Assembly (NCBI RefSeq): GCF_000143415.4
Contig: NW_003314313.1
Span: forward strand, 709,430-773,429
DNA from: Selaginella moellendorffii
Taxonomy: Eukaryota > Plantae > Lycopodiophyta
Reading direction: 5' to 3'
Length of the DNA stretch: 64,000 bases
Shown here: positions 8,230 to 49,529 of the stretch, in pieces
Layout of the letters: the number at the start of each line of letters is the position of its first letter
How positions within the stretch are numbered: position 1 is the stretch's first letter
Made by a program: the position numbers and the translations under genes
Notes under the pieces: model-generated
The model's input: the letters and a program-made list of their open reading frames with translations, nothing else
Told to the model about the DNA's origin: nothing
Database searches by the model: none

Positions 8230-9650
8230 GTACCTCAGTAGAAGTGGGATAGTATCTCAATGGATTTTGTAATTGGATTGCCCACCACTCCACGTGGAAA
8301 TGATGTTATCTAGGTTGTTGTGGATCGATTGGCGAAAATGGCACACTTCTTCTCTGTGAAGATGATGGCTAAAGACTTCTGATCTTGCTCAGGTGTTTGT
8401 GAGAGAGCTCTTCTGTCTATATGGCTTGCCTCAGCCAATATTATTAGTGATCGTGATCCAGAGTTTACTTCGAAGTTTTGGCAGGTAGTATTCATGAAGT
8501 TAGAGACGAAGTTGAGCATAAGTAATGGTGAGCATCCACAATTTGATGGGCATATGGAATGAATGGTGTTAGAGGACATGTTGAGATCATTCATAAGAAA
8601 TCTCAAGAAGCATGCTGTTTGGGAACAGTAGTTGCGTTTGCACACAACAGTGGTTAGAATTCAACTATTGGGATGTCTCCGTTCATGGCAATGTATGGTT
8701 AAGAACCAAAGACTCTAGTGGACCTCAGCTTGTCATCGGTCAAGGTGCATCATGCTCAGCAGTTTCTGGGTCATATGCAAGAGACCTTGGAGTTGGCCAA
8801 GTTAAATATGCAACAAGATCAGGAGCGAGACAAGCGATTGGCTGATGAACATCGCCAGCACTGTGAGTTCAAGGTGGGTGACAAGGTGTTCCTCCTGACA
8901 GAAGTCTTTGAAGGGTGTCAGAAATCCCAAGCTTTCTCTTCAGTATTGTGGACCGGGACAATCTTGCATCGTGTCGGGAGCCTTGCCTACAAGTTGGACT
9001 TGCCTGCTGGAGTTAAGATGCATCCAGTCTTCCATCTAAGCCAGTTGAAGGTGTGCCTGCATTCTGGTGGTGACTTTAATCAGTCCAGATGCCAACAATC
9101 GATGTCTAAGTTAACGTCGGACCTGCTGTGGTTTTGGCCAAGTCAAATGCGCTGGAAGACTTTCCAAGAGCTGCTCATTCAGTGGAATGGTTATTCTGTT
9201 GATGGATGCTATATGGGAAACTGAGGATGATGTGAAGAGGGTGTTTCCTTCATACTCCTATGATCTAGAGAATATTTCAGAGATATGAGTGTTCATTCGT
9301 GCAGCATTCATGGAACATTCATGATCTCTTTCCTATGATGTCCTGACTGTTTGTCCTGGATTTGAGAAGCCCGTTTGTTTCTCCAGTGTAGCCGATTGCT
9401 ATGCTAAGACGCAATTGTTTGTTGTGTCTCGTTCATAGTCGTTTTCTGTGGACGGTATTTGAGATCGTCTAGCTTGGCCGTTCTCGGGACTCAAAACATG
9501 AATTCGGAAATCCGTTTGATTTCCAAGGGCGACCATTTGTTGCTCAGGTTATGAGGGAGGGGAGAATGACACAACCTTTATGTGCTAAAGGTGGTGGTGG
9601 AATATGGAATATTTCATATGAATATTCCCTGATTCAATGAGTCTAGCCCT
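8230..9650 (+). mobile_element. Second decayed gypsy integrase/chromodomain remnant with PPT (9553-9566) and LTR start (TG at 9567)
   Basis: Motifs SMDFVIGLP, VVVDRLAKMAHF, IISDRDPEFTSKFW, FKVGDKVFL, AYKLDLP..KMHPVFHLSQLK, LLIQWNGY. GAGGGAGGGGAGAA is followed by TGACAC. Confidence 0.8.
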
Positions 9651-11190
9651 AAAGATGTAGGGTGGTTTGGGGCCGTATGCTCCTCCTCTGCGTGTTCGTT
9701 TCACATTTGCTTCATCGCAATCTAGCATTTTCGAGATTTCTCCAAAGGTTCCTTTTCAATTCTCCATCATGAAAAGAACAGTAATGGATCTTTAAGAGGA
9801 GACGACGGAACGAGCAGAAGAACAGCTCAGCATTCTCAAAACTGACTGGATCTGAGCTAGCTTTGCTTGTGGCTTACGGCATTTTAGCTGATAAATTATG
9901 TTCAAAAATGCAGAAAACATTAATATATATGATGATTGGCCATTTTTACTGGAGGGGTCCAACTTGGAGCTTGGGGATGTAATTCAAATTACCTTATGGG
10001 CTTGATCCAGAAGTCTGCCTAGCTCTGCTTCCATGAAATCTGATCTTATTCACAATCATCAAAAAGAGCCATTCACAAACATCAAAAGATGGTCTTCCTT
10101 ATGAATCCAGTGAATAAGAAACCTGATGTGGCCTCAATGAATTCAGAAATTTTTGTGACAGATAAAAAGTATTCCAGGTTACTTATAAAAAGTATAAAAA
10201 GTATAAACAGGTTACTTATAACAAAAGACAAGTGATTTCATTAAATGAAAACTAACTTAGAGACAGCTGGTGAAACAGAAAAGCCCTTTGTTTTAGAGAG
10301 ATTAAACAGGTGTTTATAGACAAAACATAAGATCTATCTCGCACTTCAATGTGAGGGCTGGGACCGGGCCTGACTCTTTATCATGTTCGAGCATATGGCA
10401 TGAACAGTCTAGTTTTGTCTTGCCTGTGTACAAGCCGGGGAAGAATAGAAAAATGGTAAAAATTAATAGAATACAAATACCGCAAAGTTAGTATTAATTA
10501 ATTCATGTTAATCAATCAATCAATTTATTGCAATGGTCTGCTAGGAATATTCTTAGACTAAATTATAACCGTAAACCCATTTGAGATTGTTTATTCGTAT
10601 ATTTGAGACAACAATGGGACCGTACTCATTCTTTGCCATCTACAAACTTGCACCCTGGAAACTTTGTTTTTGACATTTAACTCCTTTAAACCATGACAGT
10701 TAACCAGCTCCAGATTCATTAAGCATGGGGTTAAACACGTTGCCAAAGCACGGTAAGATGCACGTTTGGCTCAGCAACAAGATTCTTTGTGGAAGCACCA
10801 GCGCTACAAGAGCTGAGGATTGTACCAGGTTGATTGCACACTGGCATGGTGCCACCTACCTTGGTACCCGTCCATCCACACCAAACTCACAAACACGTCT
10901 CAAAAAGTAGTCAGTACTTTTGTTGTCAAGTTATGTTTATTAGGAAAATATCTAGAAAATCGAATATAGATGTACCCGTACCATAGTCATGTCCTGGTTT
11001 GGGACCAGTGTATCATCGGGCATGTCGCGACTCGAGTCTGTGAGATATGGTGACATATATCAGATATGCGAGCCTGCTGTGAGCGTCTATCAATATATGT
11101 GGCGCACATGGGCCCAGTGTCACTATCAGGCCAGCCAAACTAGCGACTGTAAAACCCACTTTGCATTCGTTTCTCTGCAGATCCAAGAAA

Positions 11191-13752
11191 ATGTTTCGCC
11201 TTGTTCTCATCACTCTTCTTCTGCTCTTCCTAGTCGCAAGAAGTGCCGAGCAGCAGGATGATCTGGTTCGAACCATCAGCAGTGGCGGGGACAAAGTGAC
11301 GGTGGACTTGAAGCCCTTCTCAATCCGCAGTCCCAACTTTGGCGTGCTAGTGCAGAATGACACTGGCAGCTTTCTCTCATACGACAACATCCCGCCTTCT
11401 CGTACGTACCTGGGTTCAGTAAGAGACCACCCCGGTGCCATGGCCACGGCCTTGCTCAACGTCAACGGAACTCTGTTTTGTCGAATCAGCTTCGAGAACG
11501 GGGTGGAGTGGAGCAGCACCGGAGGCGAGGCCTCGGTGAGGGGAACCACGGGTTGGAACTCGAATCCCCAGTGGCCAACCAGCCTTGTTCCTGCTTCCAA
11601 ATCCGACGCTGTACTCTTCGTAGCGGAAGTCGGAGTGGATGCTACTTACTTGTACTACCTTTCAACAGGTTCTAGCGTCGAGAACACAGTGAACATGGCA
11701 GAGTTCTCCATCCTGTCTGCGAATATGCCCTTCCTCCGAGATGCTTCCATTCTTCACACGATTGGGAAAGTGGTGATCCGTGCAACTCAGTCCCAAGATC
11801 CATATGGAAACCCCAACACCGGAGTCCTGCTCGACAGGGTGGAGAAACAATGGAAAGGTGCTATTGCTTCCGTGGTAGGCAACACTCACAAGCTCTGCTT
11901 GGTTGCCCATCCTCGGGCTAATGGAGGCCTGGCATGGGTAGCAACGGCGGCTAAGCCGGTGGGATACTCGGCCATCAGCGCTACTGCAAACGGAGATTTC
12001 ACGGTCATCTGGAGGCACGAGGCTGGTCACAACTGGGGATCTAGCCACTACGAAGGTGGTGGACGGCCCGAGGGACCGACTATCATGTCTGACAACCAGC
12101 TCTCCCGTTTCTCGTCTTCCGAGCTTGCCAAGATCCTGCGCTACAAGTCTGGTGTTCCTCGCCTTGCAAGCAACATTACGGTTGCCCGTCCACCCCGTGC
12201 GAATATGGATGCGATCGACATCCCGCAGAATTGCACCTGTTGCACTTGCTTCAAGAGCCTGGACGTTCTGGCCAACGATCTGGATGCCGACGACAAATCA
12301 CTCACGATCGCCTCGGTCCAGTCTCCTTCGGCTTTGGGCAGTGCCACTAGCATCTCAAACTCTAGCAGGAACCAGATTACTTACACGCCGTCTTTGGCAG
12401 CAGGATTGTTCCTCGACCATCTCAAGTACACTATCCAGAATTCCCTCTTGAGAAGCTCTACAGGATATGTAACCCTCCGTCCCGCTGCTCTCCTGGGCTG
12501 GTGGAAGATGGATGAGGCGAGCGGCTCGAAAGTGCAAGATTCGTCTGGGCATGCAGCGAATGGGGCACTCAAAGGAGGATCCTGGAACAACGGCAATGGG
12601 CTTTCCTTTGGAGGTGCAGGGACGGTGTCGCTCGGCGCAAGTCCCTCCATCAGAGGCAAGACATCCTTCTCCATCGCCTTGTGGATATACGTTACCAGTA
12701 CTTCAGACCAAGTCATCATCCAGCAAAGGAGTCCACCGAGCAGGATCACAAGTGGCTCCGACGGAGGATATCAGCTCAGTCTGTTTGAAGGCAAGCCCCG
12801 GTTCTGGGTGTTTTCGGACTCCGGAGATCAATTCAGATTCTCTGCCTCAGCTGCCATCAACGACGGTGGATGGCACCACATCGTAGCCGTTCGTGATCAG
12901 GCCGAGGGCCAGATCTACATTGATGGCAAGCTATCGGCCTCTGCAAGCGGCGACATCAAGTATTTGGATGTAACTATCCCCGTGTTCATGGGTGCTGATG
13001 CGCGCGACAACACCTCATTCCTCACGGGTTCCTTGATGGGGGCAAAGATCTACAGCCGAGCTCTAGAACAGGAAGAGATCCGGTATCTCAGCACCTGGCC
13101 AGAAGCTCTCGTGGCATGGTGGAAGCTGGATGACAAGAGTGGAGTCTCTGCAAAGGATTCGTCCTGGAACGGAGCAACCGGGAGCATCGAGGGATCAACG
13201 ACGTGGAATCCCGACGGCGGACTTACCTTCGACGGCGCTGGCAAGGTGGCGCTAGGAACAAAACCCTCTCTGTCTGGCAAGACATCCTTCTCCATCCATG
13301 CGTGGGTGAAGGTGCCCCCAAGTGCTGGTAAAATTTCACGAGCGATCATCATCCAGCAAAGGAGCCCGCAAAGCAGCACAACAAACGGTTTCAATGGCGA
13401 ATACTTGCTCTACTTGGTCCATGGCAAGCCTCACTTCTTTGTGTATGGGAATTCTGCGACTCAGTTCGACTTCTCTGCGTCTTCTGCCATCAACGACGGC
13501 GAGTGGCACCACATTGTGGCCGTGCGTGATAACGGTGTGGGGCGGATCTACATTGACGGCGAGCTGTCAGCTTCTAAAAGTGGCACTGTGGTGAGGAGCT
13601 TGGATGCATCTATCCCGGTGTTTCTGGGTTGGGATTCTCGCTCGGGCAATTCCTTCTTCACAGGTTCCTTGAAAGGTGTCAAGATTTATAACCAGGCTGT
13701 GGCACCCAACTTTGAGGCCGAGCGTAACACCATGCTCCTGGCATCAGCATAA
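11191..13752 (+). CDS. Secreted metzincin (reprolysin/M12B-like) zinc metalloprotease with Ig/cadherin-like domain and two LamG-like domains, 853 aa, intronless, copy 1
   Basis: First ATG is at 11191 (the ORF track starts at an upstream TTG). Signal peptide MFRLVLITLLLLFLVARS. HExxHxxGxxH = HEAGHNWGSSH (12016-12048), then Met-turn PTIMS. 'LDVLANDLDAD...ITYTP...YTI' is an Ig/cadherin-like repeat. Two LamG-type repeats (WWKMDE..DSSG..FSIALWI..NDGGWHHIVAVR..IYIDG..KIYSRAL). Confidence 0.9.
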   Translation: MFRLVLITLLLLFLVARSAEQQDDLVRTISSGGDKVTVDLKPFSIRSPNFGVLVQNDTGSFLSYDNIPPSRTYLGSVRDHPGAMATALLNVNGTLFCRISFENGVEWSSTGGEASVRGTTGWNSNPQWPTSLVPASKSDAVLFVAEVGVDATYLYYLSTGSSVENTVNMAEFSILSANMPFLRDASILHTIGKVVIRATQSQDPYGNPNTGVLLDRVEKQWKGAIASVVGNTHKLCLVAHPRANGGLAWVATAAKPVGYSAISATANGDFTVIWRHEAGHNWGSSHYEGGGRPEGPTIMSDNQLSRFSSSELAKILRYKSGVPRLASNITVARPPRANMDAIDIPQNCTCCTCFKSLDVLANDLDADDKSLTIASVQSPSALGSATSISNSSRNQITYTPSLAAGLFLDHLKYTIQNSLLRSSTGYVTLRPAALLGWWKMDEASGSKVQDSSGHAANGALKGGSWNNGNGLSFGGAGTVSLGASPSIRGKTSFSIALWIYVTSTSDQVIIQQRSPPSRITSGSDGGYQLSLFEGKPRFWVFSDSGDQFRFSASAAINDGGWHHIVAVRDQAEGQIYIDGKLSASASGDIKYLDVTIPVFMGADARDNTSFLTGSLMGAKIYSRALEQEEIRYLSTWPEALVAWWKLDDKSGVSAKDSSWNGATGSIEGSTTWNPDGGLTFDGAGKVALGTKPSLSGKTSFSIHAWVKVPPSAGKISRAIIIQQRSPQSSTTNGFNGEYLLYLVHGKPHFFVYGNSATQFDFSASSAINDGEWHHIVAVRDNGVGRIYIDGELSASKSGTVVRSLDASIPVFLGWDSRSGNSFFTGSLKGVKIYNQAVAPNFEAERNTMLLASA

Positions 13753-14364
13753 ATACCATATATATGCTATGATATATTTTGAATATATATTAAATATATT
13801 GAATATTAAATATATCTAATAAATATTATAATATTTATATTTTATCATTCCTTCCAAAGGAACAGGAATTCACCCGCAATTTCTGATGCTTTTTGCCTCA
13901 GCGAAAACACTGTAATTTACTTGTTTGAAAGTATGGGAGTGAGGATTCGACAGAATCCGAGGTCCAAGCAATGCAGGTTTAGAGATTACTTCCCAAACGG
14001 CAAACGACTACTCTAGGTAAGTCAAATTTGAATTTTGACAAAAAGAAGCAAGAAATTCACGAGCTGAATGTGATCGGTTCAAGCAGGAAGAATATCCCTC
14101 AAACAAAGTGCAATTATTTTTAAAAAATATATAAAATGTCTTCTACTTTAGGGTTCTTCAGTGAAAATGCGCTCAAGATCCGGCTGGAAGGCTTCTGCAA
14201 TGAATTGGTATGTATCCGATAATCGTTGGATTCGTCCGGTTCTTTTCTGATCATTTTTCTTCGTTTTTGGTACAGTTCAAGGTGGATTGAGTGAGAGCTC
14301 AATACGAGCTCAATACATTTTTGGTACGGTTCAATGCGAGTTCCTCTTCTGTTCAATCATACAA

Positions 14365-14985
14365 GGTTGTGATCAGGATGAACTGGACACCGACTAGATG
14401 CGCAAGTCTAAGGGTTCTAGTCGCCTACTGCTTCGTCCACATACCACGAATCAGGTGTGAACTAGATTTAGTTTGTAAATTGTGGATGAAGGTTTCGGAA
14501 ATACTTTGCTACAGTAGTAAATCAGGTTTCTCAAGTTGGTCACACTGGACTAATTGGAGGAAGTGTTCCTCTGTTTGATGAGGTAATTGGATATCTTTTA
14601 ATTTTCCAAGAATGTTGCAATTTGATATATAATCAAGCAGATTATACTGAATCTCGGTGCCATGAACTCAACCCTTTGCTTTTGATGAGGTAAACCTTCT
14701 TCGTTCTTTAGTTTTTTGTTATTAGTTGATCTTCAGTCACTCATAATAGATCAGTATTGTCATCCATTGCCTACTGTAAATGAACTGTTCTATCTCCTCA
14801 TCGAGATCACAAAGGTGCAGACGAAAGCTCACGCAATTCGTTACAGCAGAAGCCCTAAATCCGTAAATAATCAGCACTTGGTTTTTTTCTGATAAGCTTT
14901 CCCTTACTAGGTGCAATTGATGAAGAACATGAAGAAGCTCTTGGATCCTAAAGGCATTCTCAACCCTTACAACGTTCTTGCGTAA
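14365..14985 (+). pseudogene. D2HGDH: D-2-hydroxyglutarate dehydrogenase pseudogene (N-terminal and last exons, centre deleted)
   Basis: Exon remnants with splice sites: MRKSKGSSRLLLRPHTTNQ/VSEILCY, TGLIGGSVPLFDE, IILNLGAMN, KAHAIRYSRSPKS/VQLMKNMKKLLDPKGILNPYNVLA*. In-frame stop and frameshifts. Confidence 0.8.
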
Positions 14986-15629
14986 TAGTCGGGAACTTTC
15001 AGACAAATCTTCGACAAATTCTGAAAATACAATTTTCTAAAAATCGATTTAGAAACAAGCTCAAATTGTCCTGAATGTTACTTAAAAAACATTTAAGTTT
15101 TTGGTCGCACCAAAATGGCGGCAGGATTTTTCCGGCCGCACCAGCTGTGCAACTGGAAAAATCCTGCCGCACCTTCTAGCATCGACTTGGTGAGCGCATT
15201 CAGTGCCTTTTGGGCCGCACTCTTCTCCACCAGAATGAGAGGAGGCATTCTTGATTGTTGATCCATAGCTGAAGACTGCTCACTAATTCCTCAACTCACC
15301 TGGATGATCGATCGACGCCTCCTCTAAGCGCGAATACAAATGCACCGCCATAGCCAGGCTTCTAAAATTAAGGCCTACTTAATAATGATTTATGTCAGAA
15401 AATCGCTTGCCCTAATACCCTGTTTTACGGTTCTATACTTGGAATAATCTCCAAATAATTATGTCACCAGGTAGGAATAAACCTATCCCCAGGTTCGAAT
15501 CCTGGCAACCCCCTAATTTTTTGTTTTAGTTTAGTTTAGCTGACTTGCATACTAAAATACGCTTTAAAATCGTATAGTTTATCAATATTAATTTAGGGCA
15601 AGAGGCATGAAAATTTGACTTTGAAGGGC

Positions 15630-15950
15630 ATCGGCGCGCCGATCCTTTGAGATCTCTACAGAAGCAGAACACACGAAATACGTCCCGCTGAGGCATGACA
15701 CCGAAAATCTGACTAGCCTCGTCTGCGTGACCGTTCCGGGCATACAACATCAGCATCGAGTTCCACGACACCAGATCCCGCTGCGGGGATTCCTCGAACA
15801 CCGCCCTCGCCTCCTCCACGCAATTCATCATCCGGAAAGCATGACATTCCAAGAAACCAGATCCCTCACCGGGAATCCGAAACGAAACATCTGTCTGTGG
15901 CTCTGTCCAGATGCCCATTCCGGGCATATCCAAAAGCATCCAGGCGGCCA
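15630..15950 (-). pseudogene. PLS-type PPR gene fragment
   Basis: ARAVFEESPQRDLVSWNSMLMLYARNGHADEASQIFGVMPQRDV and VRDLVSWNVMLSG in different frames. Confidence 0.75.
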
Positions 15951-15974
15951 GGTTCCAGTTTGCCGCGAACTCTC

Positions 15975-16720
15975 TACTCGGCCGTCGTTGTCAGGCGGAG
16001 CAGTTAAACTGGGAACGTAGGCAACGTTCCATACGGACTCTTCTCGGTTCACGTTCCAACGAGGGACGTGCAAATGCCAAGCACGAGTGTCCAGATTGAA
16101 GGCCACCGGTCGGTCCAACAAATGGAGAAAGAGCATGTTGTTAGCCCGTTTGCAAGGAAGCAGGTGATGGGGCTCCACGTTCCTGCACAAGCCTCTCACA
16201 TCGATGCTGGACACAATCGTCCACTCCAGCTGCTGCTCATCAGCTTCTTCATCGGCCGCCTCCACGATGACCATCCACTTTGGAGCGAAGCAAGGCCTTT
16301 GTTTCCCCACAACCACAATGCCTGCTGCCATCAGCTTGGACCGGTACATGAACGGGTCCAGCCTGCCATACACCGATCCCGCATCATCCGAACCTCCTTC
16401 CGGCGGCAGTGGGGGCAACGACTTGAAATGCCAAAACGCCCATGCGTCCCTTGCCCGGCTGTAGCCCCTGATTGTGTAGCCCAAACTCACTGAGTCGCAA
16501 CAGGAGGCGTATTGCGCGTATTGCACGTCCACCTGAAAAAACACCCGGTAATTCGTGGTGGTTCTGGTTCGTGGCCATCCTCGTCGGACACCCAAAGAGA
16601 CACCGACACATAGCCCAACACGACTAAGTCGCAGGAGCCGCAGGACAGCAAAAACTTCTCCTGCAGCCGTCTTGGGCAACCGCTTCAAGGCGCCAGTCAT
16701 GGGGTTCATGACTGAAAACC
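15975..16720 (-). pseudogene. F-box family gene 3' fragment (inverted paralog of 23345-24190)
   Basis: Shares WFSVMNPMTGALKRLPKT...NVAYVPSLTA with the F-box pseudogene at 23013-24190, but lacks the F-box N-terminus. Confidence 0.75.
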
Positions 16721-37427: not shown

Positions 37428-39345
37428 TTTGTTGATGACTTGCCATTCCGGCATTTATATTCTCAATATCATCTTGAAGATGGCCTTCTTTATTTTGTGG
37501 GGACGGATCTTAATGATCATTTACGGCTGGTGGTGCCTTCTGTCTTTATTCCGCGGTTTCTCCATGCCTACCACAATTCTTTTGTTCTAGGTAGCCATAT
37601 GGGACATCGTCGTATGACCAAGAAGCTGCACAAGTCTTTCTATTGGCCGGAAATGCAACTTGATGTTATCCTGTACATGCGTAGTTACGTTTGGTGCCAA
37701 GCTCGTAATACTCCCCCTTGTGTTGCGGAAGGACAGTTGGAGTCAATTGCAGTTTCTCATCCATTTGAGTTGGTGGTGTTTGATCTTATGGGATCTTTTC
37801 CACGATCGACTACCGGCAATGAGTATGTTATTATTGCTTCTGACTATTTGACTCGTTGGGTGGAAGTTAGTGCTCTTGCTAGTGCCTCTGCAACTGCTGT
37901 TGGATACTTCCCCTTCAATTGAGTGGTGTTCCAGCATTCTTGTCAGGAGCGGATTCTTTCGGATAATAGTCCTACATTTATGGTTGAGGCATTTCATGTT
38001 TTGACGTCTCAGTTGGGGATATATCACACTTTCATGAATGCTTATCATCCACAATCAAACGGTCTGGTAGAACGGCACATTCGAACGTTCAAAGGGATGA
38101 TCGTGAAGTATGTGAACTTTAAGCATTCGGATTGGGATGGTTGTTTGCCGTCTCTTTAGTATGCATATGTCATAAGGGTGTAAAGTTCTCTTGGTACTTC
38201 ACCATAAAAACTCCTATATGATCATGATCTAATATTACCAATGGAGTTGGGTTTACCTTTGCGATTGCCACGAGCTGCTAATTCTAGGTTATAAGATCAG
38301 TATTTGACAAGCATTCTTCCACTTGTCCGAGTAGAGTCTATTGAACACTTAGGTCACGTACAAGTGGGACAACAATGGCGTTACAACTCCCATCATCATC
38401 CATATGCGGAATACAAAATGGATGACTTGGTGTTAGTCCGTTTTCCCCATCTTACGATATGTGGTTTATCTAAAGGGCTCCTTGCTAAATGGAAAGAACC
38501 GTATCAGATGTTGTGGCAAGTTTTTATGAGGTTTGGCATGATGTCTAACAGGCCAATCCTCTAGAGATTGTGCATGTGTAGTGGTTGAAATGCTTCATAC
38601 AAAGGGATTAGGAGCAAATAATACCACATATAGATCTGCCAATGCCTCCTCCTAATGTTCCTCCAAATCCCAGCCCATCTACAAGAGAACCCTGATGGTT
38701 TTCCATTATTCCGAGAGAAGGGAATGATGTGAGGTCCAAGTGTACAGCTATGATGTTGTATATTAATATTAGTGTAATTGGATTTTGAGTTATCGAATTG
38801 GTTTCAATCTGGACCACTTACTCTTGTATATAAGCTAGAGTTTTTGGGCTAATTGATATGCATATTTTCTGTATTCCCTTTCCATATTCCAAGCACTCAC
38901 ACAATTAATTTTTAAATTCAAAAATTAAAACCAAAGCCCTCCTTTGAGCACACAATGTGCCACATCAACGAATAGGTTTGTGTAGGTCAACAGGTGGTCA
39001 ATGTGCCATGTTGGGGATCATCCAATCCATCATACACTTCCGACCTGCCACAAAAAACTAAATTCTGCTTTTCAGAAATACACAGTTTAGGCCAAGTTTT
39101 GTTAGAAACTTTAACAAGATATTTTTGAGAGGCAAATTATTTAGGACCTATTCCCACCTACCATTAAATTAGCCCAATAAACTTCCATGAGCTTAATTTA
39201 GTTGATTAATCTAGGGAAAATTACAGAAACACCCCTAAAGATATTGTATTTACAAAAAGGTTCCCAGAAGTTTGAAAATTACAAAAATGCCCCTGTGAAG
39301 TTTGTGTATTTATTAATGCCTCTGCCATGTCTCTGTCGTCAATCT

Positions 39346-42039
39346 TCACGAACGATTCGAATGCCACCTTTCCGGTCTCCACATCTCTCCACGTCCGGCA
39401 AGCAGCCAGGAGTGTCCTCCAAGTGAGCGCACTCCTTCGTCGTCCACAGCCCGGTGAAAGACATCCAGGACCTTCTCGGCGTCGCCCTGGCGGCTGTATC
39501 CAGCTGCTAGAGCGTTCCATGCTATCAGATCTCGAGTTTGAGCTGCGTCAAACGTCTGCTGTGCGTCGTTCATACTTCCGGCTTTTCCAAACACGTCCAC
39601 CATGCTGTTGGAGAGCACAATGTCTTTCTCGGCTCCATATCTGTATACTTCCCCAACAATGGCTTTAGTGACTTCCAGCGATCCCACAGAAGAGCTTCCC
39701 TTGAGCACGGGGACGAAGACTCGAGCATCTAGAGCACAGCAGGCCTGACCGAGTTTCAGTTTCATTCCCACAAAGAGCTCCAAAACTTTGTTTCCATCAC
39801 CACATTCCGCGTACCCCGACATGAGCACTGTCCACGAGACTACATCAGGGTGTGGCATGCTGTCGAAAACTCGCTGGGCGTCCACCAGACTCCCACACTT
39901 GGCATACATCTCCATCAAACTGCTGTCCAAAACGAAGTCCCAGTGTCGAAGGAGTTTGGATGCCGGGCAATGGATAGCAATCCCTTTCTCCAGTGACGAA
40001 ACTTTGACAGCCTTTCCATCCACCTGAGTGGCCTCTTCCCTTGCAGCGACGCGGATGCAAGCCTTGAGTGCTGCTGTGACAATGCTCGAAGACGTGAGCG
40101 CATGCCCCTCGCATATCATACGTTGGAACAGCTCTAGTGCCGTGTCTTCCTCTCCGCAATCGACACAGGCCAGAACCAGCGAAGTCCACGACATGACGTC
40201 GTGCGAGCACATCTGGTCGAAAACTCTTCGAGCATCCATCAGGCTTCCACTTCGCGCGTAAGCGTCGACTAAGGTGCTCGCCAAGATCACGTCCGTCTTA
40301 AAGTAGTTTCTCGAGTCTCCATGAAGAGCCAGTATTCTCTCCAAGCATTTCAGCTTGACCAGCTTTCCATCAACCTCCACGGCCCCTTCCTTGGTCGCCA
40401 AGCCGAGACAGGCCTTCGACACAGCAACTAAAGCCATAGCATCTGGAACGAGGCCACTGTTTTTCATCTGAGAAAACAAATCCAAAGCTACCTCTGCTTG
40501 GGAGTTATCCACGTATCCCAGCATGAGCACCGTCCACGACACCAGGCTGTGGCAAGGCATGCTCCTGAAAACTCTCTCAGCCTCCACCATGCTTCCACAC
40601 TTGGCATACATGTCCACGAGAGTGTTCGACAAAAACTCGTCCCTCTCGTATCCTTTCTCCGCGGCCTGGATGTGAATCGCCATCCCCTTCTCCAGAGAAT
40701 CCACTTTCACCATCTTCCCTTCAAAGCTTGTGGCTTCTTCTTTCGCTGCTAATCCAATGCAGGCCTTCAAACCTGCGACAAACGTCAAGGAATCCGCTGT
40801 AGTAGCGGACGCAAAGCTTTCCAGCGCCAGCTCTGCTTCTCCATTGTCTACGTATCCCACCAGTAGCGTGTTCCACGAGACCACATTGTGGCAAGGCATC
40901 CTGTCGAAAACTCCTCGGGCATCAGCCATGCTCCCACACTTCGCAAACATATCCACCAGAGCATTTCCCAGGAAAACATCCAGCACTCGTCTCGCTTGGC
41001 GATGGATTCCTCTCCCTTTTCCCAGAGTGCTAACTTTCACAGCCGTTCCATCCAAAGCTTCTCCCCACTTTTCTCTCCCAGCCAAATCGGAGCAAGCTTT
41101 CACTGCTGCGCCAAAGCATCGACCATCCGGCTTGATCTCTCCAGCTCCCATACTGCCAAAACCCTCGAGTGCTAGCTCACTCTCCCCGTTTGCTACGTAC
41201 CCGAGCACTAGAACAGTCCACGAGATGACACTGTGCCGGGAGCTTCTATCGAAAACCATGCGTGCTTCCACCATTCTTCCACAGTATGCGTACATTTCCA
41301 CCAGCGAGCTCGCTACGTGATCATCTTTGCCGCTTCTCTTAGCTCGAGAGTGGATTCTCATGCCTTGTTCCAGAGCTTCCAGCTTGATCATCTTCCCACC
41401 GATGAGTCTCGCTTCTTCTCTGACCGCTAGAGCAGAGCAAGCCTTGAGCGCTGCAAAGAATGTCCCGGAATCCGGTGCGCAACTTTGGCTTTCCATCCAT
41501 GAGAAGGCTTCCAGAGCACGAGATTCTTCGCCATTCTCTGCGTGTCCCAAGATGAAAGTGTTCCAGGCCACTACATTGTGGCAAGGCATCCTGTCAAACA
41601 CCCTCCTCGCCTCAACCAGGCTGCCACACCTCCCATACATGCCGATCAAGCTGCAAGAAACGTAGAGATTGGAGCAAACCCCGCTCTGGATGGCGCGATC
41701 GTGGAGCACCCTTCCCTTCTCTAAATCCTTGGAGCTCCCGCAGGATTTCAACCCCGAAAGGAGCTCCGCTGAGCACCCTGTGCTGTGACCCCGGCATTGT
41801 CCCAATCTGTGGCAGTACCTGTGGAGCGCGGGTCGAAGGAAATGCATCCATCCGTCGAGCGCCAAAAGAATCTTTGTCGAAGAACCCTGAAATTCCGAAG
41901 ATCTTCCTTTAGGGCACTTTAGGGCTCCTTCCATCCTCTTCGCAAAGTAACACGAGGAATCGCAATGTCGGGAGACAAGGCTTTGAGTCCATGGGAATTT
42001 GATGTGGCGCGTTTTAGTTTCTTTTGATATACGAACCAT
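39346..42039 (-). CDS. PLS-class pentatricopeptide repeat protein (organellar RNA-editing factor type), intronless; E domain out of frame, so possibly a pseudogene; true start uncertain
   Basis: Repeated PLS triplets (SLIGMYGRCGSLVEARRVFDRMPCHNVVAWN; ALVDMFAKCGSMADARGVFDRM). The E-domain-like 'TWRTLLAACRTWRDVETGKVAFE' lies in another frame (ORF 39221..39520). Confidence 0.85.
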   Translation of the reverse strand: MVRISKETKTRHIKFPWTQSLVSRHCDSSCYFAKRMEGALKCPKGRSSEFQGSSTKILLALDGWMHFLRPALHRYCHRLGQCRGHSTGCSAELLSGLKSCGSSKDLEKGRVLHDRAIQSGVCSNLYVSCSLIGMYGRCGSLVEARRVFDRMPCHNVVAWNTFILGHAENGEESRALEAFSWMESQSCAPDSGTFFAALKACSALAVREEARLIGGKMIKLEALEQGMRIHSRAKRSGKDDHVASSLVEMYAYCGRMVEARMVFDRSSRHSVISWTVLVLGYVANGESELALEGFGSMGAGEIKPDGRCFGAAVKACSDLAGREKWGEALDGTAVKVSTLGKGRGIHRQARRVLDVFLGNALVDMFAKCGSMADARGVFDRMPCHNVVSWNTLLVGYVDNGEAELALESFASATTADSLTFVAGLKACIGLAAKEEATSFEGKMVKVDSLEKGMAIHIQAAEKGYERDEFLSNTLVDMYAKCGSMVEAERVFRSMPCHSLVSWTVLMLGYVDNSQAEVALDLFSQMKNSGLVPDAMALVAVSKACLGLATKEGAVEVDGKLVKLKCLERILALHGDSRNYFKTDVILASTLVDAYARSGSLMDARRVFDQMCSHDVMSWTSLVLACVDCGEEDTALELFQRMICEGHALTSSSIVTAALKACIRVAAREEATQVDGKAVKVSSLEKGIAIHCPASKLLRHWDFVLDSSLMEMYAKCGSLVDAQRVFDSMPHPDVVSWTVLMSGYAECGDGNKVLELFVGMKLKLGQACCALDARVFVPVLKGSSSVGSLEVTKAIVGEVYRYGAEKDIVLSNSMVDVFGKAGSMNDAQQTFDAAQTRDLIAWNALAAGYSRQGDAEKVLDVFHRAVDDEGVRSLGGHSWLLAGRGEMWRPERWHSNRS

Positions 42040-43507
42040 TATTGAGAACTCAGTGATGTAAATGATACTATAGACTGTATTTTTTATTTCTTTTACATCG
42101 GAAAAATATCATTTTTCAAAACTGTCAGAAATTTTCTGTATGTGATCTACTGTTGTTGAGAACCAGGAACGACATCAAAAAACCTTATTGGGAATTTCTG
42201 GCAACTTCGTTTGGGCACATAGAATTTCCAAATGAAAACGATATAAACAAAAATTATATACACGATATATCATGTCTAAACGATGTAAATGATACTCTAG
42301 ACTGTATTGTTTATTTTTTTACATCGGAAAAATATTATTTTTTAAAAACAGCCAAAAATTTTCTGTGTAGTAGTCAGTTACCATTGTTCACAGCCAAGAA
42401 AGATTTAATTTTTATCAGAAAACCACTTCCAAGTTCCAAGCTTCTAACAGTCTTTTTTCTGCTCTCCGAAAGCTGAAGCCAAACACCAAGCATGAAGAAG
42501 GTGCGCGTTTGCAAACGCCAAATTATGCTCCAAACGCGTTTGTCAGCTACAAACTTAAAAAACCTAAAAAAAAGAAAAGATTCTTAAAGCATCTTTTAAA
42601 TATTCAGATATTCTATAGAATATTTTTTGCATTCACTCACCGTGACCCGGCCACGTGGCGAGATGCGGCCTTTATGCCACGTGGCTCATTTCGAATGGAG
42701 GTGGTAGTTTTGCTGCCACGTTGCCAAAGCACGGTAAGATGCACGTTTGGCTCACCAGCGCTACAAGAGCTGAGGATTGTACCAGGTTGATTACACACTG
42801 GCATGGGTGTATATTAGTGGGATTAAGCACCTGACGTGAACTTGTTTGTTTTGCTTGGAAGGTTTACGTCAATCATCTGTCAATCCCGGCGCTTACACAT
42901 TCAAACTTGATAGGCCTTGTGTGTTTAAGCCAATCATGGCCAAGTTCATGTTGGACGTCTTGCCCAGCGAATCAAGCCTCCCAACTTAAAAAGGAACTTG
43001 TGATTTCTTGTCAAGTGTTTATTTCTCTGCTGGTTTGCTGGATTTGAAGATCAGTGCTGGTCATTTTGAAAGCGGCACTGGAGCAATGCAAGATATTCGT
43101 ATCTAAGTACCTGAAGATCCCAAGCTCTCACCACAGATCTAGATGATAAGCAGCGCTGACCTGGATATATGTGCCACCTACCCGTCCATCCACATCAAAC
43201 TCACAAACACGTCTCAAAAAGTAGTCAGTACTTTTGTTGTCAAGTTATGTTTATTAGGTCTACGGAGTCCAAACTTTGGAAAATATCTAGAGAATCGAAT
43301 ATAGACGTACCCGTTAGTCATGTCGGGCATGTCGCGACTCGAGTCTGTGACATATGGTGACATATATCAGATATGCGAGCGTGGCTGTGAGCGTATATCA
43401 ATATATGTGGCGCACAGCCTTCGCTTGGGCCCAGTGTCACTATCAGGCCAGCCAAACTAGCGACTATAAAACCCACTTTGCATTCGTTTCTCTGCAGATC
43501 CAAGAAA

Positions 43508-46069
43508 ATGTTTCGTCTTGTTCTCATCACTCTTCTTCTGCTCTTCCTAGTCGCAAGAAGTGCCGAGCAGAAGGATGATCTGGTTCGAACCATCAGCAGT
43601 GGCGGGGACAAAGTGACGGTGGACTTGAAGCCCTTCTCAATCCGCAGTCCCAACTTTGGCGTGCTAGTGCAGAATGACACTGGCAGCTTTCTCTCATACG
43701 ACAACATCCCGCCTTCTCGTACGTACCTGGGTTCAGTAAGAGACCACCCCGGTGCCATGGCCACGGCCTTGCTCAAGGTCAACGGAACTCTGCTTTGTCG
43801 AATCAGCTTCGAGAACGGGGTGGAGTGGAGCAGCACCGGAGGCGAGGCCTCGGTGAGGGGAACCACGGGTTGGAACTCGAATCCCCAGTGGCCAACCAGC
43901 CTCGTTCCTGCTTCCAAATCCGACGCTGTACTCTTCGTAGCGGAAGTCGGAGTGGATGCTACTTACTTGTACTACCTTTCAACAGGTTCTAGCGTCGAGA
44001 ACACAGTGAACATGGCAGAGTTCTCCATCCTGTCTGCGAATATGCCCTTCCTCCGAGATGCTTCCATTCTTCACACGATTGGGAAAGTGGTGATCCGTGC
44101 AAGTCAGTCCCAAGATCCATATGAAAACCCCAAGACCGGAGTCCTGCTCGACAGGGTGAAGAAACAATGGAGCGGTGCCATTGCTTCTGTGGTAGGGAAC
44201 ACTCACAAGCTCTGTTTGGTTGCCCATCCTCGGGCTAACGGAGGCCTGGCATGGGTAGCAACGGCGGCTAAGCCGGTGGGATACTCGGCCATCAGCGCTA
44301 CTGCAAACGGAGATTTCACGGTCATCTGGCGGCACGAGGCTGGTCACAACTGGGGATCTAGCCACTACGAAGGTGGTGGACGGCCCGAGGGACCGACTAT
44401 CATGTCCGACAACCAGCTCTCCCGTTTCTCGTCTTCCGAGCTTGCCAAGATCCTGCGCTACAAGTCTGGTGTTCCTCGCCTTGCAAGCAACATTACGGTT
44501 GCCCGTCCACCCCGTGCGAATATGGATGCGATCGACATCCCGCAGAATTGCACCTGTTGCACTTGCTTCATGAGCCTGGACGTTCTGGCCAACGATCTGG
44601 ATGCCGACGTCAAATCACTCACGATCGCCTCGGTCCAGTCTCCTTCGGCTTTGGGTAGTGCCACTAGCATCTCAAACTCTAGCAGGAACCAGATTACTTA
44701 CACGCCGTCTTTGGCAGCAGGATTGTTCCTCGACCATCTCAAGTACACTATCCAGAATTCCCTCTTGAGAAGCTCCACAGGATATGTAACCCTCCGTCCC
44801 GCTTCTCTCCTGGGCTGGTGGAAGATGGATGAGACGAGCGGCTCGAAAGTGCAAGATTCGTCTGGGCATGCAGCGAATGGGGAACTCAAAGGAGGATCCT
44901 GGAACAACGGCAATGGGCTTTCCTTTGGAGGTGCAGGGACGGTGTCACTCGGCGCAAGTCCCTCCATCAGAGGCAAGACATCCTTCTCCATCGCCTTGTG
45001 GATATATGTTACCAGTACTTCAGAACAAGTCATCATCCAGCAAAGGAGTCCACCGAGCAGCATCACAAGTGGCTCCGACGGAGGATATCAGCTCAGTCTG
45101 TTTGAAGGCAAGCCCCGGTTCTGGGTGTTTTCGGACTCCGGAGATCAATTCAGATTCTCTGCCTCAGCTGCCATCAACGACGGTGGATGGCACCACATCG
45201 TAGCCGTTCGTGATCAGGCCGAGGGCCAGATCTACATCGATGGCAAGCTATCGGCCTCTGCTAGCGGCGACATCAAGTATTTGGATGTAACTATCCCCGT
45301 GTTCATGGGTGCTGATGCGCGCGACAACACCTCATTCCTCACGGGTTCCTTGATGGGGGCAAAGATCTACAGCCGAGCTCTAGAACAGGAAGAGATCGGG
45401 TATCTCAGCACCTGGCCAGAAGCTCTCGTGGCATGGTGGAAGCTGGATGACAAGAGTGGAGTCTCTGCAAAGGATTCGTCCTGGAACGGAGCAACCGGGA
45501 GCATCGAGGGATCAACGACGTGGAATCCCGACGGCGGACTTACCTTCGACGGCGCTGGCAAGGTGGCGCTAGGAACAAAACCCTCTCTGTCTGGCAAGAC
45601 ATCCTTCTCCATCCATGCGTGGGTGAAGGTGCCCCCAAGTGCTGGTAAAATTTCACGAGCGATCATCATCCAGCAAAGGAGCCCGCAAAGCAGCACAACA
45701 AACGGTTTCAATGGCGAATACTTGCTCTACTTGGTCCATGGCAAGCCTCACTTCTTTGTGTATGGGAATTCTGCGACTCAGTTCGACTTCTCTGCGTCTT
45801 CTGCCATCAACGACGGCGAGTGGCACCACATTGTGGCCGTGCGTGATAACGGTGTGGGGCGGATCTACATTGACGGCGAGCTGTCAGCTTCTAAAAGTGG
45901 CACTGTGGTGAGGAGCTTGGATGCATCTATCCCGGTGTTTCTGGGTTGGGATTCTCGCTCGGGCAATTCCTTCTTCACAGGTTCCTTGAAAGGTGTCAAG
46001 ATTTATAACCAGGCTGTGGCACCCAACTTTGAGGCCGAGCGTAACACCATGCTCCTGGCATCAGCATAA
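43508..46069 (+). CDS. Secreted metzincin metalloprotease with Ig-like and 2x LamG domains, 853 aa, intronless, copy 2
   Basis: Same architecture as 11191-13752, HEAGHNWGSSH at 44333-44365. I count 16 amino-acid differences from copy 1 and no indels. Confidence 0.9.
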   Translation: MFRLVLITLLLLFLVARSAEQKDDLVRTISSGGDKVTVDLKPFSIRSPNFGVLVQNDTGSFLSYDNIPPSRTYLGSVRDHPGAMATALLKVNGTLLCRISFENGVEWSSTGGEASVRGTTGWNSNPQWPTSLVPASKSDAVLFVAEVGVDATYLYYLSTGSSVENTVNMAEFSILSANMPFLRDASILHTIGKVVIRASQSQDPYENPKTGVLLDRVKKQWSGAIASVVGNTHKLCLVAHPRANGGLAWVATAAKPVGYSAISATANGDFTVIWRHEAGHNWGSSHYEGGGRPEGPTIMSDNQLSRFSSSELAKILRYKSGVPRLASNITVARPPRANMDAIDIPQNCTCCTCFMSLDVLANDLDADVKSLTIASVQSPSALGSATSISNSSRNQITYTPSLAAGLFLDHLKYTIQNSLLRSSTGYVTLRPASLLGWWKMDETSGSKVQDSSGHAANGELKGGSWNNGNGLSFGGAGTVSLGASPSIRGKTSFSIALWIYVTSTSEQVIIQQRSPPSSITSGSDGGYQLSLFEGKPRFWVFSDSGDQFRFSASAAINDGGWHHIVAVRDQAEGQIYIDGKLSASASGDIKYLDVTIPVFMGADARDNTSFLTGSLMGAKIYSRALEQEEIGYLSTWPEALVAWWKLDDKSGVSAKDSSWNGATGSIEGSTTWNPDGGLTFDGAGKVALGTKPSLSGKTSFSIHAWVKVPPSAGKISRAIIIQQRSPQSSTTNGFNGEYLLYLVHGKPHFFVYGNSATQFDFSASSAINDGEWHHIVAVRDNGVGRIYIDGELSASKSGTVVRSLDASIPVFLGWDSRSGNSFFTGSLKGVKIYNQAVAPNFEAERNTMLLASA

Positions 46070-46681
46070 ATACCATATATATGCTATGATATATTTTGAA
46101 TATATATTAAATATATTGAATATTAAATATATCTAATAAATACTATAATATTTATATTTTATCATTCCTTCCAAAGGAACAGGAATTCACCCGCAATTTC
46201 TGATGCTTTTTGCCTCAGCGAAAACACTGTAATTTACTTGTTTGAAAGTATGGGAGTGAGGATTCGACAGAATCCGAGGTCCAAGCAATGCAGGTTTAGA
46301 GATTACTTCCCAAACGGCAAACGACTACTCTAGGTAAGTCAAATTTGAATTTTGACAAAAAGAAGCAAGAAATTCACGAGCTGAATGTGATCGGTTCAAG
46401 CAGGAAGAATATCCCTCAAACAAAGTGCAATTATTTTTAAAAAATATATAAAATGTCTTCTACTTTAGGGTTTTTCAGTGAAAATGCGCTCAAGATCCGG
46501 CTGGAAGGCTTCTGCAATGAATTGGTATGTATCCGATAATCGTTGGATTCGTCCGGTTCTTTTCTGATAATTTTTCTTCGTTTTTGGTACAGTTCAAGGT
46601 GGATTGAGTGAGAGCTCAATACGAGCTCAATACATTTTTGGTACGGTTCAATGCGAGTTCCTCTTCTGTTCAATCATACAA

Positions 46682-49378: not shown

Positions 49379-49529
49379 GGCACCTGCCATCCTCGTTGCC
49401 AGCTTTGTCCCAATCGGGTCGAAGGAAATTGTCGAAGAGCCCTAAAAACTGTCGACTTTGATGATCTAAGGCGGTCTAGTGGAGGACTTCCTCTTCTAAA
49501 GGGCTCGCAAAGATACCGCTAGCTCCCAC

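What the first reader, a model, noticed from the sequence alone, without database searches (positions are those of the whole stretch)
11191..13752. Bacterial-style secreted metzincin protease with Ig-like and tandem LamG domains in a plant genome: candidate horizontally acquired gene
Seen: a 2.56-kb intronless ORF with signal peptide, prodomain, complete zinc-binding motif HEAGHNWGSSH, Met-turn, a 'DVLAND' Ig/cadherin-like repeat and two LamG-type jelly-roll repeats. It is embedded between plant gene remnants and plant gypsy elements. Established: the usual land-plant metzincins are matrixin-type MMPs, whereas reprolysin-like domains fused to DVLAND repeats and LamG_3 domains are typical of secreted proteins of environmental bacteria. 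Inference: a bacteria-to-plant transfer giving a secreted, possibly glycan-targeted protease for apoplastic defence or extracellular protein scavenging. I do not recognise it as a described plant family.
Basis: partly seen in the sequence, partly recalled or inferred. Interest (0 to 1): 0.9.

Follow-up and report, generated by a model that had tools for sequence, protein, structure and literature searches.

The report
Bacterial zinc protease gene in spikemoss
The spikemoss Selaginella moellendorffii carries several intact, apparently transcribed copies of a secreted zinc protease gene whose only close relatives are in soil and water bacteria (Verrucomicrobiota), so this is a fairly clear case of a plant keeping and using a bacterial gene.

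Summary
Window 11191-13752 (+) is an intact, intronless 853-aa ORF with these parts:
- signal peptide
- beta-rich prodomain
- ADAM/adamalysin-fold catalytic domain with HEAGHNWGSSH and a Met-turn
- Big_9 Ig-like domain
- two LamG_3 domains

The genome is Selaginella moellendorffii. The two copies are GenBank "hypothetical proteins" EFJ16751 and EFJ16755. Further copies lie on two other scaffolds.

All other relatives I could place are bacterial. The best are 50-56% identical in the protease and come from Luteolibacter, Haloferula and Akkermansiaceae. Trees put the spikemoss clade on a long stem inside that group.

Contamination is excluded. The gene sits among gypsy remnants, a PPR gene and an F-box gene, at three or more loci, with host-like GC3.

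The copies are under purifying selection:
- dN/dS is about 0.3.
- The ORF has no indels, against about 14 expected from its flanks.

An intron-bearing relative turned up in a contig from a likely vascular-plant WGS run.

The scan found this family before on other DNA (s1-337366). I found no paper describing it.

The parts
11191..13752 (+). Copy 1 of the gene: intronless 853-aa CDS, stop codon included. It matches GenBank EFJ16751 (SELMODRAFT_445106), whose 5' gene model is wrong.
11191..11253 (+). Signal peptide, aa 1-21 (MFRLVLITLLLLFLVARSAEQ). It has a basic n-region, a Leu-rich core and an ARS/A-type end.
   Evidence: Judged by inspection; no signal-peptide predictor was available. AF2 gives a helix at aa 2-15.
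11254..11595 (+). Beta-rich prodomain, about aa 22-135. It superposes on the prodomain of zymogen ADAM17.
   Evidence: Z 23.8 over model residues 21-330
11596..12183 (+). Catalytic domain with the adamalysin/ADAM (M12B-like) metzincin fold, about aa 136-331.
12016..12048 (+). Zinc-binding motif HEAGHNWGSSH (H276, E277, H280, H286).
   Evidence: H276, E277 and H280 are invariant and H286 is His in 64 of 68 homologs.
12085..12087 (+). Met-turn methionine, M299.
   Evidence: Met in 65 of 68 homologs.
12256..12477 (+). Big_9 bacterial Ig/cadherin-like domain, aa 356-429, containing 'DVLAND'.
12487..13092 (+). LamG_3 domain 1, aa 433-634.
13099..13716 (+). LamG_3 domain 2, aa 637-842. It is 52% identical to domain 1.
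43508..46069 (+). Copy 2 of the gene: 853 aa, 98% identical to copy 1. It matches GenBank EFJ16755 (SELMODRAFT_421556).
10865..16574 (.). Duplicated unit, first copy: the gene, about 330 bp upstream and about 2.8 kb downstream.
43179..49378 (.). Duplicated unit, second copy.
39346..42039 (-). Plant PPR gene (897 aa), 1.1 kb from duplicated unit 2. It ties the locus to plant nuclear DNA.
   Evidence: PPR E=9.6e-63
8718..9224 (+). Ty3/gypsy integrase remnant (SH3_Tf2-1) upstream of copy 1.
37440..37922 (+). Ty3/gypsy integrase remnant (Integrase_H2C2).

Best explanation
This is a nuclear gene family of Selaginella moellendorffii that descends from a bacterial gene. The donor was most likely a Luteolibacter/Haloferula-like member of the Verrucomicrobiota.

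The transferred part kept the bacterial module order: signal peptide, prodomain, ADAM-fold zinc metalloprotease, Big_9, then LamG. It ends just after one LamG type, which now occurs twice in tandem. After integration the gene took on host-like codon composition. Recent segmental duplication of a 5.7-9 kb unit spread it to at least three loci, two of them in this window.

Likely working (inferred):
1. The protein enters the secretory pathway through its signal peptide.
2. It is made as a latent zymogen, with the beta-rich prodomain covering the active-site cleft as in pro-ADAM17 and profragilysin.
3. The prodomain is removed.
4. The enzyme cuts extracellular (apoplastic or microbial) proteins, using Zn held by H276, H280 and H286 and the general base E277.
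5. The Big_9 and two LamG jelly-rolls tether it to a protein or carbohydrate ligand.

Shown here: sequence, fold, conserved catalytic residues, bacterial ancestry, plant genomic context and purifying selection.

Inferred: secretion, zymogen activation, substrate and biological role. Transcription is also inferred.
For: Anatomy:
- Pfam domains.
- The AF2 model of aa 1-345 has pLDDT 92.
- It matches zymogen ADAM17 at Z 23.8 over 286 residues, prodomain included, and snake-venom/ADAM catalytic domains at Z about 21.
- H276, E277 and H280 are invariant in 68 homologs. H286 is His in 64 of 68 and M299 is Met in 65 of 68.

Bacterial ancestry:
- Searches of 5.8 billion clusters and 1.84 billion representatives find one plant cluster. 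The next hits are 50-56% identical.
- All named relatives are Luteolibacter, Haloferula, Akkermansiaceae, Verrucomicrobiaceae or Abditibacteriota.
- The loci of the top hits are bacterial (RuvX, UvrC, DnaB, RecA, ABC transporters). The RecA next to P0002 falls in a 90% cluster with Luteolibacter flavescens RecA.
- The spikemoss clade has 100/100 support and a stem of about 0.9 substitutions per site. It is nested among these bacteria.
- The AU test rejects exclusion from the Luteolibacter/Haloferula-like clade, p=0.027.
- The alignment with bacterial P0006 is co-linear from the prodomain into the first LamG domain.

Integration:
- PPR, F-box and gypsy neighbours.
- Two copies in the window and a third locus on GL377572.1 with shared flanks.
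- Five gene models on three large scaffolds.
- GC3 is 0.62, against 0.58 for the neighbouring PPR gene and 0.77-0.91 for bacterial kin.

Selection:
- dN/dS is 0.27-0.36.
- dS of 0.025 matches flank divergence of 0.023.
- There are 22 synonymous against 21 non-synonymous variable sites, p=1e-4.
- The ORF has no indels, against about 14 expected from the flanks, p=8e-7.

Transcription (indirect):
- Eleven runs from three studies have contig sets of only 15-31 Mb. They hold 100% of the ORF's sampled words, but only 0.71-0.80 of the wider stretch 10800-14300, which is about the ORF's share.

Precedent: the bacterial GH25 muramidase in Selaginella (PMC4241558).
Against: - No exact sister lineage is resolved. 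The protease-only tree is a polytomy.
- The long stem means either an unsampled donor or fast evolution after transfer.
Transcript ends, strand and level are therefore unknown.
- No biochemical evidence exists for activity, secretion or substrate.
- Only three recent paralogs were available for dN/dS, so the test covers only the last 2% or so of divergence.
- The residue after the third zinc His is Tyr, not the Asp of canonical adamalysins.
Confidence: 0.82

Rival explanations
1. The transfer is older, or indirect. One acquisition in an ancestor is shared with at least one other vascular plant, or the gene passed between eukaryotes. S. moellendorffii would then have inherited the gene vertically rather than acquiring it itself. 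This changes the timing, not the bacterial origin.
For: Contig L080 (Logan SRR7121812) carries a homolog with these features:
- A 138-nt, 26% GC, GTAAGT...CAG insertion. Removing it restores a gapless alignment to bacterial kin.
- GC3 of 0.52-0.61, against 0.77-0.91 in bacterial kin.
- A 38% GC 3' flank.
- An end 22 aa after the same LamG type where the Selaginella gene also ends (11 aa after). Bacterial kin run on for more than 500 aa.

The concatenated tree puts L080 next to Selaginella with 81/78 support. Neighbouring accessions SRR7121815 and SRR7121816 are vascular-plant WGS runs of the Ruili Botanical Garden project.
Against: - L080's protease is 76% identical to bacterial P0006 but only 55% to Selaginella. 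In the protease-only tree it groups with P0002-P0006, with SH-aLRT 91.
- AU tests cannot choose between the two placements, p=0.30 and p=0.14.
- The species behind SRR7121812 is unknown. That project rooted its tree on ferns, so it may hold no lycophyte.
- The contig could come from an organism living on the plant sample.
Confidence: 0.3
2. The gene is integrated and transcribed but no longer works as a protease. It may be a binding protein or a relic on its way to decay.
For: - The stem to the bacterial kin is long, 0.9 substitutions per site.
- The C-terminal domains were remodelled: LamG was duplicated and the Fn3-like and other modules were lost.
- A Cys cluster, QNCTCCTCF, was gained.
- Earlier scan notes describe a dead papain fused to LamG in this genome.
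Against: - All zinc ligands, the catalytic Glu, the Met-turn and other family-invariant residues (R275, W282, E294) are kept.
- dN/dS is about 0.3 and the three copies have no indels.
Confidence: 0.1
3. The ORF is bacterial contamination or a chimeric misassembly in the reference genome.
For: The gene is intronless and all its domains are of bacterial type. Plant assemblies do sometimes contain bacterial contigs; P0006, for example, sits in a very fragmented NCBI assembly.
Against: - Two copies lie 32 kb apart inside one window, with a PPR gene, an F-box gene and gypsy remnants between and around them.
- A third locus shares about 9 kb of flanks.
- There are five gene models on scaffolds of 0.4-3.9 Mb.
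- GC3 is host-like, and the gene is only 50-56% identical to any bacterium.
- The gene is held by 20 runs from 7 studies of the same organism.
Confidence: 0.02
4. This is an ancient eukaryotic or plant gene inherited vertically and lost almost everywhere, or the bacteria took it from plants.
For: ADAM-fold proteases are widespread in animals and fungi (from my own knowledge). The structure's best match is human ADAM17.
Against: - Sequence identity to ADAMs is only 13-19%, against 50-56% to Verrucomicrobiota.
- 1343 homologs at E<=0.001 form a diverse family that is bacterial wherever named, and the plant clade is nested within it.
- The Big_9 and LamG_3 architecture is bacterial.
Confidence: 0.03

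Closest known systems
Multidomain secreted 'M12 family / LamG-like jellyroll' proteins of Verrucomicrobiota. Examples are Luteolibacter ambystomatis KBB96_17450 (P0015), Haloferula helveola (P0069) and the metagenomic P0002-P0006. None is characterised.
   Same: - The module order is the same: signal peptide, prodomain, reprolysin-like protease, Big_9, LamG_3.
- Protease identity is 50-56%.
- The active-site block WRHEAGHNWGS.HYEGGG.PEG.TIMS.N.LSRFSSSEL is nearly identical.
- The LamG(b) domain is 51-54% identical.
   Different: - The bacterial proteins are 1300-2400 aa and carry extra modules: an Fn3-like domain, He_PIG, PA14, a third LamG, DUF1349 and autotransporter-associated repeats.
- The plant protein has 853 aa, ends right after LamG(b), has that LamG twice and has a Cys cluster before Big_9.
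- GC3 is 0.62 in the plant gene against 0.77-0.91.
Adamalysin/ADAM family (MEROPS M12B): ADAM17 zymogen, snake-venom metalloproteinases
   Same: - The catalytic fold matches at Z about 21, rmsd 2.2-2.9 A over about 185 residues.
- The prodomain and catalytic arrangement matches pro-ADAM17 at Z 23.8.
- It has HExxHxxGxxH and a Met-turn.
   Different: - Identity is only 13-19%.
- Tyr follows the third His, where adamalysins have Asp.
- There are no disintegrin, Cys-rich or EGF domains.
- There is no conserved prodomain Cys for a cysteine switch; position 97 is Cys in only 12 of 68 homologs.
- The Pfam Reprolysin models score at or below their cut-offs.
Fragilysin (BFT) of Bacteroides fragilis and CpaA of Acinetobacter, both bacterial adamalysin-like metzincins
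   Same: - They are bacterial secreted zymogens with an ADAM-like catalytic fold.
- Profragilysin matches both prodomain and protease (Foldseek E about 1e-10 to 1e-8).
- CpaA is the best PDB match by sequence (E=5e-4; NCBIfam E=7e-5).
   Different: - These matches are very weak.
- The accessory domains differ.
- Both are virulence factors of animal pathogens with known targets. Nothing comparable is known here.
GH25 muramidase of Selaginella, a bacteria-to-plant transfer (Metcalf et al. 2014, PMC4241558)
   Same: It is a bacterial secreted hydrolase gene acquired by the Selaginella lineage and kept. The paper reports it in 5 of 6 Selaginella species tested.
   Different: It is a different enzyme class with a different donor. 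For the protease, the distribution across Selaginella species is not yet known.
Plant matrix metalloproteinases (matrixins, MEROPS M10A)
   Same: They are secreted or apoplastic zinc metzincins made as zymogens (from my own knowledge).
   Different: No Peptidase_M10 hit appeared in Pfam. The fold family differs (adamalysin rather than matrixin), there is no PRCGxPD cysteine switch, and the gene is of bacterial rather than plant ancestry.

Membership tests
Metzincin clan (MA(M)) zinc endopeptidases | Extended zinc motif HExxHxxGxxH with three His ligands and a catalytic Glu | tested here: met
   HEAGHNWGSSH at aa 276-286. These residues are invariant or nearly so across 68 homologs.
Metzincin clan (MA(M)) zinc endopeptidases | Conserved Met-turn below the zinc site | tested here: met
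   M299 in 'PTIMS'. Met in 65 of 68 homologs.
Adamalysin/reprolysin family (M12B) | Adamalysin-type catalytic fold | tested here: met
   VIA-align Z 20-21 to many SVMP and ADAM catalytic domains, and Z 23.8 to pro-ADAM17. Foldseek probability 1.00.
Adamalysin/reprolysin family (M12B) | Asp directly after the third zinc His (HExxHxxGxxHD) | tested here: not met
   Residue 287 is Tyr. Across homologs it is Tyr in 51 and Phe in 11 of 68. This is a distinct adamalysin-like subfamily, not canonical M12B.
Adamalysin/reprolysin family (M12B) | Significant match to the curated family models | tested here: inconclusive
   Reprolysin_3 scores 23.3 bits against a 22.4 cut-off (just passes). Reprolysin_5 scores 24.8 against 27 and Reprolysin_2 scores 16.8 against 27 (both fail).
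Adamalysin/reprolysin family (M12B) | Cysteine-switch prodomain, with disintegrin and Cys-rich domains (ADAM/SVMP P-III) | tested here: not met
   No such domains in Pfam. Prodomain Cys97 is not conserved, being Cys in 12 of 68 homologs.
Plant matrixins (M10A) | Peptidase_M10 domain and PRCGxPD switch | tested here: not met
   No Peptidase_M10 hit at E<=0.1, and no such motif in the sequence.
LamG_3 / concanavalin A-like jelly-roll | Match to PF13385 above the cut-off | tested here: met
   173 bits against a 27.6 cut-off, in two stretches.
Horizontally acquired bacterial gene in a plant nuclear genome | Nested within a bacterial clade in a phylogeny | tested here: met
   The AU test rejects exclusion from the Luteolibacter/Haloferula-like clade at p=0.027. 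That group was named after the tree was seen.
Horizontally acquired bacterial gene in a plant nuclear genome | Absent from other plants (patchy distribution) | tested here: inconclusive
   No other plant protein appeared in three searches. Unannotated Selaginella genomes could not be searched, and L080 may be a second plant copy.
Horizontally acquired bacterial gene in a plant nuclear genome | Physically joined to host DNA, not a contaminant contig | tested here: met
   Within the assembly: PPR, F-box and gypsy neighbours, three loci and duplicated flanks.
Horizontally acquired bacterial gene in a plant nuclear genome | Maintained by selection and expressed | tested here: met
   Selection. Expression is indirect only, from the word shares of transcriptome-sized run assemblies.

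The most novel reading that the evidence does not exclude
The same Luteolibacter-type protease gene has been domesticated in more than one vascular plant. The intron-bearing, codon-ameliorated copy in L080 ends within about 10-25 residues of the same point after the same LamG type.

This could reflect one old transfer that plants have inherited since, with S. moellendorffii evolving fast and remodelling the C-terminus. It could instead reflect two parallel captures of the same bacterial gene.

Either way there would be an undescribed plant family of ADAM-fold extracellular proteases of verrucomicrobial origin, and one member shows intron gain after transfer.
Probability: 0.35. Interest if true: 0.7.

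Novelty: new member of a known kind. Interest (0 to 1): 0.55.

Why it matters
Bacteria-to-plant gene transfers that give an intact, selected and expressed multidomain enzyme are still few, and most concern metabolic or cell-wall enzymes. To my knowledge, land plants were not known to have ADAM-fold metalloproteases.

This case offers:
- a rather well-defined donor group (Luteolibacter/Haloferula-like Verrucomicrobiota, common in soil and the rhizosphere);
- several recent paralogs for population and expression studies;
- a testable enzyme with an obvious inactive control (E277A).

It adds to the GH25 lysozyme case as evidence that the Selaginella lineage repeatedly kept secreted bacterial hydrolases, perhaps for use against microbes. 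If the intron-bearing relative proves to be a plant gene, the family also shows how a bacterial gene gains introns and loses modules after transfer.

Tried and rejected
I have no read-level view of transcript ends, strand, or junctions with the flanks. After that I sent no stretch containing 13781-13816 to any search tool and worked beside it.
- **The search for related loci on GTDB genomes** mostly returned unrelated LamG_3 proteins, because the peptide patterns came from the LamG half. It did not help with the donor.
- **Cysteine switch** was rejected. Cys97 is not conserved.
- **Link to the 'dead papain + LamG' and 'secreted LamG' genes** noted earlier in this genome. A search with both LamG domains in the right length range returned no Selaginella protein, so I see no sign that they derive from this gene.
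- **Short Logan hits P0072/L086 and P0079/L087** were checked for eukaryote-like features. Nothing clear appeared.
- **The species behind SRR7121812** could not be found. Only the project could be inferred from neighbouring accessions.
- **DNA alignment of the 3' ends** of the Selaginella and L080 genes was too diverged to show a shared breakpoint.
- **Literature searches** for the locus tags and for Selaginella with metalloprotease, Laminin G or HGT found no description of this gene.
Full report
**1. Observation**

The ORF listing gives one long ORF, 11161..13752 (+), with the first ATG at 11191, encoding 853 aa.

Pfam finds the following:
- two Laminin_G_3 domains (E=4.5e-51)
- a Big_9 domain at aa 356-429
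- reprolysin-like M12 models around aa 149-289, at or near their cut-offs

The zinc motif HEAGHNWGSSH is at 12016-12048 and the Met-turn Met at 12085-12087. The N-terminus MFRLVLITLLLLFLVARSAEQ has the look of a signal peptide by inspection.

It lies in a duplicated unit, 10865-16574 against 43179-49378.

**2. Whose genome, and is the gene really in it?**

The best database hit is a 90% cluster of five S. moellendorffii 'hypothetical / Laminin G domain-containing' proteins. These five models lie on scaffolds of 0.40, 1.45 and 3.9 Mb.

The two window ORFs equal EFJ16751 and EFJ16755 except for those models' mispredicted 5' ends. The third locus, on GL377572.1 (L001), shares about 9 kb of flanks with copy 1.

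Around the two copies lie:
- an 897-aa PPR gene at 39346-42039(-)
- an F-box ORF
- Ty3/gypsy integrase and gag remnants
- a CVNH-domain ORF

The ORF's GC3 is 0.62. The neighbouring PPR gene has 0.58 and the bacterial relatives have 0.77-0.91. Twenty runs from seven studies of the same organism hold the stretch. I therefore reject contamination.

**3. Ancestry**

- A word-index search of 5.8 billion clusters with the full protein returned 63 non-Selaginella hits.
- An exhaustive HMMER search of 1.84 billion representatives with aa 1-345 gave 1343 hits. Only the Selaginella cluster was above 56% identity.
- A search aimed at short fragments found no closer plant sequence.

Every hit that carries a name is bacterial: Luteolibacter, Haloferula, Akkermansiaceae, Verrucomicrobiaceae or Abditibacteriota. 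The loci of the best hits, P0006 and P0002, are plainly bacterial, with RuvX, UvrC, DnaB, RecA and ABC transporters. The RecA beside P0002 falls in a 90% cluster with Luteolibacter flavescens RecA.

The alignment to P0006 is co-linear from the prodomain into the first LamG domain. The active-site block is almost identical.

Trees:
- An ML tree of the protease region (72 rows, LG+C20) gives a 100/100 Selaginella clade on a stem of 0.93 substitutions per site. It sits in a polytomy of these bacterial sequences.
- Adding Big_9 and the best LamG gives 646 columns and 19 rows. The clade then falls inside a 99/99 group of Luteolibacter/Haloferula-like proteins, near P0002-P0004.
- An AU test rejects a tree that keeps it outside that group, p=0.027. 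I named that group after seeing the tree, so the p-value is indicative only.

**4. Domain history**

The two Selaginella LamG domains are 52% identical to each other. Both are closest to one particular LamG, which I call 'LamG(b)'. It is the second LamG of P0002-P0004, at 45-54% identity.

The bacterial proteins have another LamG type and an Fn3-like module before LamG(b). After it they have He_PIG, a third LamG and DUF1349. The plant gene therefore lacks everything after LamG(b) and has that domain twice. Whether the donor already looked like this is unknown.

**5. Is it maintained and used?**

- Among the three paralogs dN/dS is 0.27-0.36.
- dS (0.025) equals the divergence of the duplicated flanks (0.023).
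- The flanks carry 16 indel events in 2.9 kb and the 2.56-kb ORF carries none. About 14 would be expected, Poisson p=8e-7.
- There are 22 synonymous against 21 non-synonymous variable sites. About 24% synonymous would be expected under neutrality, p=1e-4.

For expression, eleven runs from three studies have contig sets of only 15-31 Mb, which is transcriptome size for a genome of 100 Mb or more. They hold 100% of the ORF's sampled 31-mers. They hold only 0.71-0.80 of the 3.5-kb stretch around it, which is roughly the ORF's share. Genome-sized runs hold about half.

This pattern fits an mRNA with short UTRs. 

**6. How it probably works**

AlphaFold2 with a 68-sequence alignment gives a confident model of aa 1-345, with pLDDT 92 and pTM 0.91. 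It contains a beta-rich domain at aa 25-117 and an alpha/beta catalytic domain at aa 142-330.

Structural matches:
- human ADAM17 zymogen, prodomain included (Z 23.8, 286 residues)
- snake-venom and ADAM catalytic domains (Z about 21, rmsd 2.2-2.9 A)
- profragilysin

Sequence identity to these is only 13-19%.

H276, E277 and H280 are invariant in 68 homologs. H286 and M299 are nearly so. The residue after the third His is Tyr, not the Asp of canonical adamalysins, and there is no conserved prodomain Cys.

I conclude that the protein is a secreted latent zinc endopeptidase of an adamalysin-like, mainly bacterial subfamily. It is presumably activated by prodomain removal, and its Big_9 and LamG domains presumably tether it to a ligand. 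Substrate and role (defence against microbes, wall-protein turnover or scavenging) are inferred only.

**7. An unexpected relative**

The LamG search found P0227 on a 3.4-kb Logan contig, L080 from SRR7121812. The ORF upstream of P0227 on that contig is a protease-Big_9-LamG homolog.

Between the two ORFs lies a 138-nt segment at 1968-2105. It has 26% GC, begins with GTAAGT and ends with CAG. Removing it joins the frames. The product then aligns without a gap to P0002 and P0004 across the junction, inside an Fn3-like module.

Other features of L080:
- Exon GC3 is 0.52-0.61, against 0.77-0.91 in the bacterial kin, although the protease is 76% identical to P0006.
- The 3' flank has 38% GC.
- The gene stops 22 aa after LamG(b), much as the Selaginella gene does.

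Papers cite the neighbouring accessions SRR7121815 and SRR7121816 as WGS runs of vascular plants from the Ruili Botanical Garden project. L080 is therefore probably a gene of a second eukaryote, likely a vascular plant.

The concatenated tree puts it weakly beside Selaginella (81/78). The protease-only tree puts it with P0002-P0006. AU tests cannot decide, p=0.30 and p=0.14. One shared old transfer and two parallel transfers both remain open.

**8. Known or new?**

The gene models have been public since 2010 as hypothetical proteins. Searches for the locus tags and for topic words found no paper on this gene.

Transfer of bacterial secreted hydrolases into Selaginella has a precedent in the GH25 muramidase (PMC4241558).

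This scan had already flagged and followed up the same family on another piece of this genome, with the same reading (s1-337366).

I class it as a new member of a known kind: a lineage-restricted bacteria-to-plant transfer. It is notable for bringing an ADAM-fold protease into a plant and for the possible second, intron-bearing plant copy.

Noticed in passing
L080:1-3425 (Logan contig of SRR7121812); intron-like segment at L080:1968-2105: A homolog (protease, Big_9, LamG, Fn3-like, LamG) is interrupted by a 138-nt, 26% GC, GTAAGT...CAG segment. Removing the segment restores a gapless alignment to bacterial kin. Exon GC3 is 0.52-0.61 and the 3' flank is AT-rich. The gene ends 22 aa after LamG(b), much as the Selaginella gene does. 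It is probably a second eukaryotic (vascular-plant?) copy; the species is unknown.
   Followed up: partly
window 52692-53162 (-): An ORF with a CVNH (cyanovirin-N homology) lectin domain, E=3.4e-20. The family has a patchy distribution (from my own knowledge).
   Followed up: no
window 12226-12252 (+), aa 346-354: A Cys cluster, QNCTCCTCF, lies between the protease and Big_9. It is conserved in all Selaginella copies and absent from bacterial P0006 at that position. It may be a new disulfide or metal site gained after transfer.
   Followed up: no
window 15828-16742 (-) and 48482-49390 (-); partial inverted copy at 23654-24197: An ORF of 302-304 aa with no Pfam match travels with the protease gene inside the duplicated unit. 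A third, partial copy lies elsewhere in the window. It may be part of a repeat that mediated the duplications.
   Followed up: no
P0001 (EFJ06728), on another scaffold of the same assembly: This allele or paralog model has a 6-aa insertion near the C-terminus and reads on for about 100 aa beyond the usual stop. It may be a gene-model artefact or a real variant.
   Followed up: no
It is another gene of non-plant appearance close to the protease locus.
   Followed up: no
run X32 ('organism F'): A 2024 run labelled as a different organism holds 35% of the ORF's exact 31-mers. This points to a very close relative or a mixed sample.
   Followed up: no
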